A DNA stretch of 63,310 bases, filler included, from Octopus bimaculoides (GCF_001194135.2; 8 parts of 7 records of this genome joined end to end with filler, not necessarily neighbours in it), one strand, 5' to 3'; positions 49,244-51,266 are shown, counted from the whole stretch's first letter. Translations and numbers: made by a program. The notes: a model not told the origin generated them from the sequence alone.

Positions 49244-49308
49244 CACAGAGGCATATATGCATTTACACAAACGTGCATTTTCATATACATGCATGTGCAA
49301 ATATTTAC

Positions 49309-50939
49309 TTCTTCCTTGCCTTTTACCCTCCAACTCGAAGTATAAGCCACTTATAATTGAATTCCATGTCGTATAATTTTTCGCTTCTGTACTTATACTC
49401 TGCCATGAATGTCCCCCTTTCTCTAGTTCCTTTTGTGTTGATCTACGCTATGAGTTCTTAGGCCTACCCATCTTTCTATATCCATCCGGATTCCACTGTA
49501 AAGCACTTTTCGCTACACTTGATGTGTCTTTTCTAATTGTGCTACCAATCCACTTCCACTTTTTCTTAAATATTTGCTCCTTAATCGAAACNNNNNNNNN
49601 NGTTCTTTATTGAAATTACAATTGCGCTCCATACTTTTTTTAACAGGTGAAAAGCGGTCCTTGCCTTACTTATCCTCGTCTTAATATCTTCATCTGTGCC
49701 GCCTGAGAACTTTATCTTACTACCTAAATACGTAAACTCGGTTACATCCTCTAGTTCACCGGTTTCTAGTTTAATACGTTCGCTGTTTTCTTCATTAACG
49801 CGCATAATTTTTGATTTGTTGCGGTTGACTTTCAATCCTAGTTTGGCGGCTATTGCCTCTAATTTTGACGTTTTATTTTGCATTTGGCTATATTTTTGTG
49901 AACTAAATTGCTATCTGGGAAGAGAGTAAGAGTAGAAAAGGCAGGAAAGGGGAAGGATGGCTGGATGCTAACATCAATTCTAGAACAAAAAAATTCGATG
50001 GAAGGAGCATTTTGAAGATTTGCTCAATAGACTACCTCCAGACACAATAGCCAACATTGCGCCAAGAAATTTGGATCTTAACATCAGCCTTGACCCACCG
50101 TCCAAGTTTGAAATAAGAAAGGCTATACAGCTCCTCAAGAATGGGAAAGCGGGAGGTGTAGACAACATTCTAGCTGAAGCAATGAAATCAGCTATAGAAA
50201 TAGCGGTAGAAATGTTTCAACCATTATTTTCTAAGATATGGTAGGAAGAAAAGAGGGACTCATCGCAAAATTGCCAAAAAAAAGGTGATATAAGCATATG
50301 TGGAAATTATACAGGGATTATGTTATTATCGACTCCCGGAAAAGTTTTTAACAGGATACTTTTAGAACGGATGAGGACAGCAGTTGACAAATTGTTGCGT
50401 AAAGAACAAGCCTGATTTAGGAAGAACCGTTCATGTGTAGATCAAATCGTCACTCTTCGCATCATCTTGGAGTAAAAAGCGCAGAGTGGAATGCACCGCT
50501 TTATATTAACTTTATTGATTTCGAAAAGCATTTGATAGTGTAGATTGGGAAGATTATGGAAAATTATGCAGCACTACGTCATGCCAGACAAGTATATATC
50601 TATAATAAGAGCAATTTACCAAGGAATGTCATAGCGAGTCTTGCATGGAAGCTGAGCTACGGATAAATTCGAAGTAAAAACAGGAGTTCGACAGGGCTGT
50701 ATACATAATCCCTTTTTATTTCTTCTAGTTATAGATTGGATTATGAAGGAAACTACGATTGAAAGCCAAACGGGCATTGAATGCATGGATGCAGAAGCTC
50801 TAGAAGATCTCGACTTTGCAGATGATATAGCGCTACTTTCACAAACATGTAGCCAAATGCAAAAAAAAAAAAAGTCAAAACTAGAAGCAATAGCTGCCAA
50901 ACTAGGATTGAAAGTCAACCGCAACAAATCAAAATATTA
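49309..50939 (-). mobile_element. RTE-clade LINE insertion with an inverted 5' part (3' half on minus 49309-49915, 5' half on plus about 49903-50939)
   Basis: Plus strand: RWKEHFEDLLN...GKAGGVDNI...NYTGIMLLSTPGKV...FIDFEKAFD..RQGC..PFLF...DLDFADDIALL. Minus strand: SKLEAIAAKLGLKVNRNKSK...EFTYLGS...DEDIKTRISKARTAF. Candidate TSD TGCAAATATTTAC/TGCATATATTTAC. Confidence 0.85.
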
Positions 50940-51266
50940 TGCATATATTTACACAAAAGGTAAAACAAAAATCTTTCTAGTAGAAACATAGACTGCTTGT
51001 TGTTAGCCTAAAGTTAATTTTAAATGTTTGCAACGAAAATGAGAACAGCAATTCATTGTTTGTGATAATCAGACTCACTAAGTATAAAATAATTTCAATA
51101 CCTTAGCTAGAACACAAACCACAACTACTCTACCACCCTTATAACAAAAAGCAGTTCGAATGATACACCATGAAATCGAACATTTAATGTTATCATTTCT
51201 CAAGTCATATAATTAGCTTATCCAAAGGTGTGTTATGTAATTTCTTCTTGATTTGATTTTGTTTAC

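What the first reader, a model, noticed from the sequence alone, without database searches (positions are those of the whole stretch)
49296..50952. RTE LINE with a twin-priming-type 5' inversion
Read in element orientation (minus), the insert runs antisense from the post-FADD region (50939) back to a 5' truncation point (about 49903). It then runs sense from just after FADD (49915) to the 3' tail (49309). About 115 bp is present in both halves (49802-49915 vs 50827-50942, including an identical 39-bp run), and a 13-bp 12/13 repeat flanks the whole insert. This is the geometry of twin priming described for human L1 (Ostertag and Kazazian 2001), which to my knowledge is rarely reported for RTE-clade elements or molluscs.
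Basis: partly seen in the sequence, partly recalled or inferred. Interest (0 to 1): 0.75.

Follow-up and report, generated by a model that had tools for sequence, protein, structure and literature searches.

The report
RTE-like retrotransposon copy, 5' half inverted
This is one dead, roughly 1.8-kb copy of an RTE-like LINE retrotransposon whose upstream half was inserted backwards, apparently in a single event of the "twin priming" type known from human L1: a tidy example outside L1, but still one ordinary decayed repeat copy.

Summary

**Structure**
- 49902-50942 (+ strand) encodes reverse-transcriptase residues about 395-743 of the closest relative.
- 49902-49309 (- strand) encodes residues about 713 to the C-terminus, plus a short 3' tail.
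- The two 5'-truncated ends abut at 49902 with no filler.
- They share a 101/105-nt inverted overlap (49802-49902 vs 50838-50942): 7 substitutions, 2 indels, and one 39-nt identical run.
- A 13-bp direct repeat (12/13) flanks the composite at 49296-49308 and 50940-50952. Chance P is about 0.001-0.003.
- The + half has no 3' end anywhere in the piece.

**Assembly gap.** The sequence is not continuous across 49592-49601. The reading frame changes and about 61-63 codons (about 185-190 bp) are missing. Both sides are still collinear parts of the same half.

**Age.** Both halves have lost conserved residues equally (9/92 vs 3/37). The overlap divergence (6.9%) fits twice the estimated per-copy decay (about 8%).

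**Verdict.** A single retrotransposition with a twin-priming-type 5' inversion and an unusually long internal duplication is the best reading (about 0.65).

**Not done.** I found no family consensus, empty site or genome-wide count. RTE-clade membership and a molluscan host remain untested. This is a new member of a known kind, of modest interest.

The parts
49296..49308 (.). Left copy of the 13-bp flanking direct repeat (putative target-site duplication), TGCAAATATTTAC. It abuts the element's 3' end.
   Evidence: It matches 50940-50952 at 12/13. Chance P is 0.001 (shuffles) to 0.003 (real windows). The last 4 nt (GTAA on the - strand) also resemble the AAGTAA tail motif of relatives, so they may be priming microhomology.
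49309..49591 (-). Sense half, 3' part. It holds the C-terminal coding region (about residues 592-674 of P0001: KKKWKWIGSTIRK...WNPDGYRKMGRPKNS*RRS...SGL), a probable TAA stop at 49325-49323, and a purine-rich tail of about 15-20 nt.
   Evidence: tblastn and the frameshift-aware alignment show one stop (49450) and no frameshift. The tail was compared with relatives L001, L006 and L007.
49592..49601 (.). Assembly gap (10 N) inside the sense half. About 61-63 codons (about 185-190 bp) of the element are missing and the frame changes across it.
   Evidence: Residue coordinates on P0001, P0002, P0012, P0020 and P0081 jump by 61-63 across the gap.
49602..49902 (-). Sense half, 5' part. It starts five codons after FADD (SQKYSQMQNKTSKLEAIAAKLGLKVNRNKSKIMRVNEE...KARTAFHLLKKVWS) and is 100 codons with no stop or frameshift.
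49802..49902 (-). Arm 1 of the internal duplication (the same element positions as 50838-50942).
   Evidence: 94/105 columns; I10; E = 2.5e-33.
49902..49903 (.). Inversion junction. The 5'-truncated ends of the two halves abut head to head, with no filler and at most 1 nt shared.
   Evidence: DNA homology of arm 1 to arm 2 ends at 49902. Protein homology of the + half starts at 49902 (TKLLSGK).
49902..50942 (+). Inverted half (antisense relative to the element's tail). It covers the linker and reverse-transcriptase residues about 395-743 of P0007 (113-461 of P0001), through FADD to KLGLKVNRNKSK. It is decayed, with 4 stops and at least 5 frameshifts.
   Evidence: Pfam RVT_1 E = 1.3e-20. tblastn and the frameshift-aware alignment are.
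50838..50942 (+). Arm 2 of the internal duplication. Its last 3 nt (TGC, 50940-50942) are shared with the right repeat copy, giving microhomology at the inferred internal priming site.
   Evidence: and the sequence.
50940..50952 (.). Right copy of the flanking direct repeat, TGCATATATTTAC.

Best explanation
One retrotransposition event of an RTE-like LINE produced a 5'-inverted, 5'-truncated copy (a twin-priming-type product).

**Inferred steps**
1. The element's endonuclease nicked the window's + strand after ...ATATTTAC (49308).
2. That 3' end primed reverse transcription from the RNA's 3' tail. The cDNA reached a point five codons past FADD. This is the sense half, 49309-49902 on the - strand, about 770 nt once the gap is counted.
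3. The other strand was cut 13 nt away. Its freed 3' overhang (...ATGCA-3' on the - strand) annealed through 3 nt to an internal site of the RNA about 100 nt downstream of that point.
4. This primed a second cDNA, which ran about 1040 nt further towards the RNA's 5' end. This is the inverted half, 49902-50942.
5. The two cDNA ends were joined head to head. The result carries a 101-105-nt internal duplication and a 13-bp target-site duplication.
6. The copy has since decayed by roughly 4% per site.

**Shown:** the geometry, the overlap, the flanking repeat, the microhomology, the equal substitution decay, and the absence of a 3' end on the inverted half.

**Inferred:** the order of events, and that one RNA served both primers.
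For: 1. **Geometry.** The + half covers residues 113-461 of P0001 and the - half covers 431-536 and 597-674. Both are 5'-truncated and abut at 49902.
2. **No independent 3' end.** No C-terminal coding and no tail motif lies to the right of 50942 or anywhere else in the piece. The + half therefore lacks the 3' end an independent insertion would have.
3. **Flanking repeat.** The 12/13 13-bp direct repeat flanks the composite (P about 0.001-0.003). Its length fits the RTE-clade range of 7-15 bp, with a mode of 10-12 (PMC6007223; PMC4245944).
4. **Left boundary fixed independently.** Relatives end 22-24 nt after their stop codon with AGGC(T/A)TAAGTCAAGTAAGTCA. This element has GGGTAA-AAGGCAAGGAAGAAGTAA, which ends within a few nt of 49308.
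5. **Priming microhomology.** TGC is shared by the end of the inverted half and the repeat. This matches the frequent microhomology at the 5' junction of 5'-inverted L1 (PMC2912911).
6. **Same age.** Residues at columns at least 95% conserved among 120 relatives are lost at 9/92 (+ half) vs 3/37 (- half), Fisher P = 1. The implied decay is about 4.1% per site, so twice that is about 8%. The observed overlap divergence is 6.9%, CI 2.8-13.8%.
7. **Known category.** Internal duplications are a recognised class of L1 twin-priming products (17% of 5'-inverted inserts; bioRxiv 10.1101/2024.08.27.596794).
Against: - Frameshifts are unevenly spread: at least 5 in the + half (347 codons) against 0 in the - half (182 codons). 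All lesions together give one-sided P of 0.05-0.09. Both indels in the overlap are derived in the + arm. This hints that the + half could be older.
- The duplication (101-105 nt) is well above the L1 median of 22 bp. The inverted segment is also longer than the forward one, the reverse of the L1 trend.
- The left repeat copy lies on a different contig from the junction and the right copy (N gap 49592-49601).
- The target lies in a short period-16 tandem repeat (49252-49294), which raises background similarity between the flanks. A second candidate repeat exists (TTTACACAAA at 49263-49272 and 50948-50957).
- There is no family consensus, no empty site and no second example.
- In experiments, 5' inversions were almost confined to L1 in human cells (PMC4245944).
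Confidence: 0.65

Rival explanations
1. The same single-event geometry, but made from two RNA molecules of the same family. This is a 'dual priming' variant: one RNA is primed at its 3' tail on the first nick, and a second RNA is primed internally on the second nick.
For: The 101-105-nt region copied twice is easier to explain with two templates than with one RNA copied past an already primed site. L1 internal duplications have a median of only 22 bp. Dual priming has been proposed for L1 and could not be told apart from twin priming there (PMC2837659).
Against: The overlap divergence (6.9%) shows no excess over twice the estimated post-insertion decay (about 8%). Nothing therefore requires two different source sequences. 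Dual priming as proposed uses the tail of the second RNA, not an internal site.
Confidence: 0.15
2. Two independent insertions of the same family in opposite orientation. An older + strand copy later lost its 3' 650-700 bp by deletion. A younger - strand copy landed exactly at its 5' end.
For: At least 5 frameshifts and 4 stops lie in the + half, against 1 stop in the - half (P = 0.05-0.09). Both overlap indels are derived in the + arm. Abundant LINE families often nest or lie adjacent to one another.
Against: It needs three coincidences: exact abutment of two 5' truncation points with no intervening base, a deletion ending exactly where a 13-bp repeat of the far flank begins, and that 12/13 repeat itself (P about 0.003). 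No repeat flanks the - half alone: 49903-49920 does not match 49290-49308. Loss of conserved residues is equal in both halves.
Confidence: 0.1
3. Assembly artefact. Either the contig was mis-joined at 49902 through repeated k-mers, or the scaffold joined flanks of different copies across the 10-N gap.
For: The piece is a gapped scaffold with five N runs. One gap sits inside the element. The family is repetitive, and the arms share a 39-nt identical run.
Against: The 49902 junction lies inside an ungapped contig (49602-51366), at the edge of the shared sequence rather than within it. The flanks on the two contigs carry the 12/13 repeat and the same local TGCAT..TTTACACAAA motif, as expected of one locus. 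The assembled order gives a textbook geometry, which a random mis-join would rarely produce.
Confidence: 0.07
4. An ordinary 5'-truncated copy whose 5' part was inverted after insertion, by a replication-based or breakage-repair rearrangement that left an inverted duplication.
For: Inversions with short inverted duplications at one breakpoint are known products of template-switching repair (my own knowledge; not tested here).
Against: One breakpoint would have to coincide exactly with the element/target boundary at 50942, including the 3-nt microhomology. Nothing else in the flanks is rearranged.
Confidence: 0.03

Closest known systems
Twin-priming 5' inversions of mammalian L1 (Ostertag and Kazazian 2001), subclass '5'-deleted + 5'-inverted + internal duplication'
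   Same: - Two opposed fragments of one element lie within one target-site duplication.
- The inverted fragment comes from further 5'.
- The sense fragment keeps the 3' end.
- There is microhomology where the inverted fragment meets the target.
- There is a duplication at the inversion junction.
- The target-site duplication is at least 10 bp, as in L1 inversions (10-20 bp; PMC4245944).
   Different: - The element is RTE-like: a single EN-RT open reading frame in relatives, no poly(A), and an (AAGTN)-like tail.
- The duplication is about 100 nt, against a median of 22 bp.
- The inverted segment (1041 nt) is longer than the forward one (about 770 nt), whereas in L1 the forward one is on average 2.6-fold longer.
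- The inversion junction has at most 1 nt of microhomology.
The single 5'-inverted Nimb-2_DR insert recovered in chicken DT40 cells (PMC4245944)
   Same: It is a non-L1 LINE with a target-site duplication of about 12 bp that shows a 5' inversion. It fits that paper's idea that an overhang of 10 nt or more is needed to prime the second cDNA.
   Different: That was a de novo event in a cell-culture assay with a zebrafish I-clade element. This is an old genomic copy of an RTE-like element in an unidentified host.
Dual priming and twin-priming variants with inverted poly(A) (Meyer et al. 2010, PMC2837659)
   Same: Both strands of the staggered break prime reverse transcription.
   Different: Those loci carry a 5' poly(T), because the second priming was on a tail. 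Here the second priming was internal, in the reverse-transcriptase coding region.

Membership tests
RTE-clade LINE | Reverse-transcriptase domain of non-LTR type | tested here: met
   Pfam RVT_1 E = 1.3e-20 on the + half. There are 1050 database relatives at E <= 1e-10, all RVT_1 and most with DUF6451.
RTE-clade LINE | Single long ORF with an N-terminal AP-type endonuclease and no sizeable ORF1 | tested here: inconclusive
   This copy is truncated downstream of the endonuclease. The relative P0007 (56% identical) has Exo_endo_phos at residues 9-236, then RVT_1 and DUF6451, in one 847-aa ORF. No other gene is called in the 678 nt upstream.
RTE-clade LINE | Very short 3' UTR ending in a short repeat-like tail, no poly(A) | tested here: met
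   Relatives end 22-24 nt after the stop codon with AGGC(T/A)TAAGTCAAGTAAGTCA. This copy has TAA followed by AAGGCAAGGAAGAAGTAA and then the flank. The alignment is ambiguous by about 4-5 nt.
RTE-clade LINE | Target-site duplication of about 7-15 bp (mode 10-12) | tested here: met
   The direct repeat is 13 bp, 12/13. The range comes from PMC6007223 and PMC4245944.
RTE-clade LINE | Phylogenetic placement of the RT with reference RTE elements (RTE-1, BovB, SR2) rather than other clades | not tested
   No reference sequences were at hand. Named relatives carry only automatic names ('hypothetical protein', 'LINE-1 ... ORF2 protein' in Schistosoma). The clade assignment rests on my own recognition of the WKWIGH...WNPxGKRxRGRPxxxWRR C-terminal pattern and on the architecture described in the rows above.
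Twin-priming 5' inversion | Two fragments of one element in opposite orientation, directly adjoining. The inverted one comes from further 5'. The sense one carries the 3' end. | tested here: met
Twin-priming 5' inversion | One target-site duplication flanking the composite, none flanking either half alone | tested here: met
   The repeat is 12/13 over 13 bp, P about 0.001-0.003. No repeat flanks the - half alone. Caveats are the target's local tandem repeat and the N gap between the two copies.
Twin-priming 5' inversion | Small deletion or duplication of element sequence at the inversion junction | tested here: met
   There is a duplication of 101-105 nt. This is larger than is typical for L1 (median 22 bp).
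Twin-priming 5' inversion | Microhomology between the target overhang and the internal priming site | tested here: met
   TGC at 50940-50942 belongs both to the arm homology and to the repeat.
Twin-priming 5' inversion | Microhomology at the inversion junction | tested here: inconclusive
   At most 1 nt (49902) is shared. The family sequence upstream of the + half's truncation point is unknown.
Twin-priming 5' inversion | Both fragments are of the same source and age | tested here: inconclusive
   Loss of conserved residues is equal (9/92 vs 3/37). The overlap divergence of 6.9% compares with an expected value of about 8%. Frameshifts are uneven, however (at least 5 vs 0; P = 0.10-0.17).
Twin-priming 5' inversion | Empty orthologous or allelic site with a single copy of the duplicated target | not testable with these tools
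   No genome of the host or its relatives could be reached. Exact-protein look-ups and DNA pattern scans found nothing relevant.

The most novel reading that the evidence does not exclude
RTE-clade LINEs, whose staggered cuts leave overhangs of 10-13 nt, may routinely undergo twin priming in this (possibly molluscan) host. Long internal duplications of about 100 nt would imply that the RTE reverse transcriptase reads through an already primed RNA:DNA stretch by strand displacement, or that two RNAs are used. If so, 5' inversion would be a general property of LINEs with long target-site duplications, not a peculiarity of L1 in mammalian cells.
Probability: 0.25. Interest if true: 0.5.

Novelty: new member of a known kind. 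Interest (0 to 1): 0.3.

Why it matters
In the literature I could search, 5' inversions are described almost only for L1. In a cell-culture comparison they depended on both the LINE and the host, and the authors argued that a long (10 nt or more) target overhang is what allows the second priming (PMC4245944).

An RTE-like element with a 13-bp duplication and a clean 5' inversion fits that prediction. It suggests the mechanism is not specific to L1.

Practically, such copies are annotated as two opposed fragments. That inflates copy counts and mimics nested insertions.

By itself, one decayed copy changes little. The value would come from a genome-wide count.

Tried and rejected
1. **Family consensus and other copies.** The protein search found nothing closer than 54-58% identity. 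A 21-nt core of the overlap scanned against metagenome and prokaryote-genome contigs gave only 26-37-nt chance matches in bacterial contigs. No consensus could be built.
2. **Host identity.** Exact-product look-ups for three window ORFs found nothing. The closest relatives come from an unnamed NCBI assembly and marine metagenomes. Named relatives include gastropods, schistosomes, a coral, amphioxus and a fish. 'Mollusc' therefore stays unverified.
Rejected. Those bases do not align, and they encode the conserved TKLLSGK of the + half.
4. **Homology of the + half beyond 50942.** One tblastn hit ran on to 50979, and the frameshift-aware alignment to P0007 ran on ten further residues, to 50965. 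Rejected as alignment drift. At the DNA level, by eye, only 7/18 bases match after ATTATGC.
5. **Purine-rich 49922-49957 as a second 3' tail.** Rejected. It encodes RVRVEKAGKGKDG, which aligns to the relatives' linker.
6. **Alternative duplication TTTACACAAA (49263-49272 / 50948-50957).** Less likely. It needs 5 filler nt and a 3' UTR 36 nt longer than in relatives, and the tandem repeat at 49252-49294 spans its boundary. Either choice still flanks the whole composite.
7. **Snap-back copying of the first cDNA.** Rejected. The inverted half covers sequence upstream of the sense half, not a copy of it.
8. **Rfam and tRNA scans of the piece.** These gave only sub-threshold low-complexity hits.

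Full report
**The assembly gap first.** The piece has N runs at 48638-48869, 49592-49601, 51367-51376, 52185-52433 and 53945-54318. The 10-N run at 49592-49601 lies inside the minus-strand half of the element.
- To its right (49602-49901) the minus strand reads an uninterrupted 100-codon stretch. It aligns to residues 431 to about 533 of the relative P0001.
- To its left (49343-49588) a different frame aligns to residues about 592-674.
- Against five relatives the protein coordinate jumps by 61-63 residues across the gap.
- So the two sides are neither continuous nor in frame. About 185-190 bp are either hidden in the gap or deleted.
- The two sides are still the same strand, in the same order, from the same element.

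**What is there.**
- On the + strand, 49902-50942 encodes the linker and reverse-transcriptase domain of a LINE: TKLLSGK...RWKEHFEDLLN...FADDIALLSQTCSQMQ...KLGLKVNRNKSK. Pfam RVT_1 scores E = 1.3e-20.
- This stretch aligns to residues 395-743 of P0007 and 113-461 of P0001 at 54-56% identity. It carries four stops and at least five frameshifts.
- On the - strand, 49902 down to 49309 encodes the continuation. It starts five codons after FADD and runs through the C-terminal WKWIGSTIRK...WNPDGYRKMGRPKNS.RRS block, with one stop and no frameshift.
- No other fragment of this kind exists in the 9.5-kb piece.

**Relatives.** All 120 listed relatives carry RVT_1, nearly all with DUF6451. The one long relative inspected has an N-terminal AP-type endonuclease in the same single ORF. 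None is closer than 58% identity, so the family itself is not in the databases I could reach.

**The overlap and the junction.**
- The two halves share element positions. 50838-50942 (+) aligns with 49902-49802 (-) over 105 columns with 94 identities, 7 substitutions, a 3-nt indel in an A run and a 1-nt indel. Self-blastn gives E = 2.5e-33.
49903-49915 does not align to 50827-50837. Instead it encodes the start of TKLLSGK, a motif present in all six relatives I inspected.
- The two 5'-truncated ends therefore meet at 49902 with no filler and at most one shared base.

**The ends.**
- On the right, homology of the + half to the other arm stops at ...ATTATGC (50942).
- On the left, three relatives from unrelated samples end 22-24 nt after their stop codon with a shared tail, AGGC(T/A)TAAGTCAAGTAAGTCA, after which they diverge.
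- This element has GGGTAA-AAGGCAAGGAAGAAGTAA at the matching place. Its 3' end therefore falls at about 49301-49309. The alignment is ambiguous by 4-5 nt because the tail is repeat-like.
- Exactly at these two independently located ends sits a direct repeat: TGCAAATATTTAC (49296-49308) and TGCATATATTTAC (50940-50952).
- I allowed about 100 left positions and 11 right positions in the search. A repeat this good arose in 0.1% of shuffles and 0.33% of random window pairs from the same piece. With the left end now fixed by homology, the real search space is smaller still.
- TGC of the right copy is also the last 3 nt of the element homology. GTAA of the left copy (read on the - strand) resembles the relatives' AAGTAA tail. 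Both are what priming by annealing would leave.
- Thirteen bp is within the RTE-clade range of 7-15 bp, mode 10-12 (PMC6007223; PMC4245944).

**Caveats on the repeat.**
- The left flank is a short period-16 tandem repeat (49252-49294).
- A second candidate repeat exists (TTTACACAAA, 49263-49272 and 50948-50957). It fits the relatives' UTR length and the junction less well. Either candidate flanks the whole composite.
- The left copy lies on a different contig from everything right of the N gap.

Without a consensus I used a proxy.
- In an alignment with 120 relatives, I counted columns conserved in at least 95% of them. The + half has lost the conserved residue at 9 of 92 such columns and the - half at 3 of 37 (Fisher P = 1). 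At the 90% threshold the figures are 13/122 and 5/45.
- Taking about 2.25 nonsynonymous-effective sites per codon, 12/129 implies about 4.1% substitution per site (CI 2.2-7.0%). Two arms born identical should then differ by about 8%. They differ by 6.9% (7/101, CI 2.8-13.8%).
- This agrees with a common origin and a single date. The test has little power, and it would also pass for two insertions of similar age.
- Against a single date, frameshifts are uneven (at least 5 vs 0). Counting all disabling lesions gives one-sided P of 0.05-0.09. Both indels in the overlap are derived in the + arm. I treat this as a hint, not a result.

**Mechanism.**
- The inverted half lacks the last 650-700 bp of the element. 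No C-terminal coding region or tail motif lies to its right. It is therefore not an ordinary insertion, because ordinary LINE copies are truncated at the 5' end, not the 3' end.
- Two independent insertions would require exact abutment of two truncation points, a deletion ending precisely at the repeat, and the repeat itself.
- A snap-back of the first cDNA is excluded. The inverted half covers sequence upstream of the sense half rather than copying it.
- Twin priming, as described for L1, accounts for every feature (PMC2912911; PMC2837659):
  1. The first nick primes on the RNA's 3' end.
  2. The second strand's overhang primes internally on the RNA.
  3. The two cDNAs are then joined.
- In a large long-read set of L1 insertions, 17% of 5'-inverted inserts carry an internal duplication, with a median of 22 bp. 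The forward segment is on average 2.6-fold longer than the inverted one (bioRxiv 10.1101/2024.08.27.596794).
- Here the duplication is about 100 nt and the inverted segment (1041 nt) exceeds the forward one (about 770 nt). So the first cDNA must have read about 100 nt past the internal priming site, or two RNAs were used. I cannot separate these two options.

**Comparison with what is known.**
- Of the 44 papers my literature query on twin priming returned (39 of them listed), those I could judge from title and abstract concern L1 and its dependants.
- Two papers on RTE insertion signatures either cite twin priming only in the reference list (PMC6007223) or never use a word beginning 'inver' (PMC13295347).
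- In a direct comparison of three LINEs in two cell types, 5' inversions appeared only with L1 in human cells, plus one Nimb-2_DR insert. The authors linked the ability to a 10-20-nt overhang (PMC4245944).
- An RTE-like element with a 13-bp duplication fits that idea.
- That the host is a mollusc could not be checked.
- That the element belongs to the RTE clade rests on architecture, tail, duplication length and my own recognition of the C-terminal motif. It does not rest on a tree.

**Verdict.** It is a new example of a known mechanism in a different LINE clade, seen once, in a decayed copy, on a gapped scaffold. Interest is modest (0.3). The genome-wide count, the consensus and the empty site would decide it, and none was within reach.

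Noticed in passing
window 47732-47872 and 49090-49234: These are two copies (83% over 145 nt, same orientation) of a short interspersed repeat. Read on the minus strand, each starts with a tRNA-like head (GCGCATGGCTTAGTGGTTA...GATTCCGGGACCGGGCGA). ARAGORN calls no tRNA. The second copy lies only about 60 bp left of the RTE insertion. It is probably a tRNA-derived SINE family.
   Followed up: partly
window 53377-53492 and 54494-54610: This is a second pair of dispersed repeats (76% over 119 nt, same orientation), of unknown family.
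   Followed up: no
L001:6040-6062, L006:1686-1707, L007:1383-1409: RTE-like elements from three unrelated samples (an NCBI assembly and two ENA metagenome assemblies) are only about 55-60% identical in protein to the window's copy. Yet they share an almost identical 3' end, AGGC(T/A)TAAGTCAAGTAAGTCA, 22-24 nt after the stop codon. This is a conserved tail, presumably the recognition or priming site of this RTE lineage.
   Followed up: partly
window 49252-49294, with 50943-50958: The insertion target lies in a short degenerate tandem repeat (period 16, about 2.7 copies, CATACATGCATTTACA). The motif TGCAT..TTTACACAAA recurs on both sides of the insert. This supports the two scaffolded contigs being one locus, but it raises background similarity between the flanks.
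   Followed up: yes
window 51651-51851 (minus strand), between 51267-51366 and 51508-51610: A 66-aa ORF (MREGNIKMIPVVIGVLGSIPLKFQDFLRQLEIPCKTDVLQKADLLGTVHILRKVL...) sits just beyond the second of two long AAT/ATT-type arrays that are inverted relative to each other. It has no Pfam hit. From memory it resembles a C-terminal tail seen in some animal retroelement ORFs, but I did not test this.
   Followed up: partly
window 54606-54640: A 36-nt near-perfect palindrome (94%) was found by self-comparison.
   Followed up: no
window 46018-55493: The piece is very rich in microsatellites: (ATAG)n, (TAGA)n, (TCT)n, (AAT)n, (ATGT)n and (AT)n. Several assembly gaps abut them. Sub-threshold Rfam hits to mir-297, mir-466 and similar families all fall on these low-complexity tracts and are artefacts.
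   Followed up: yes
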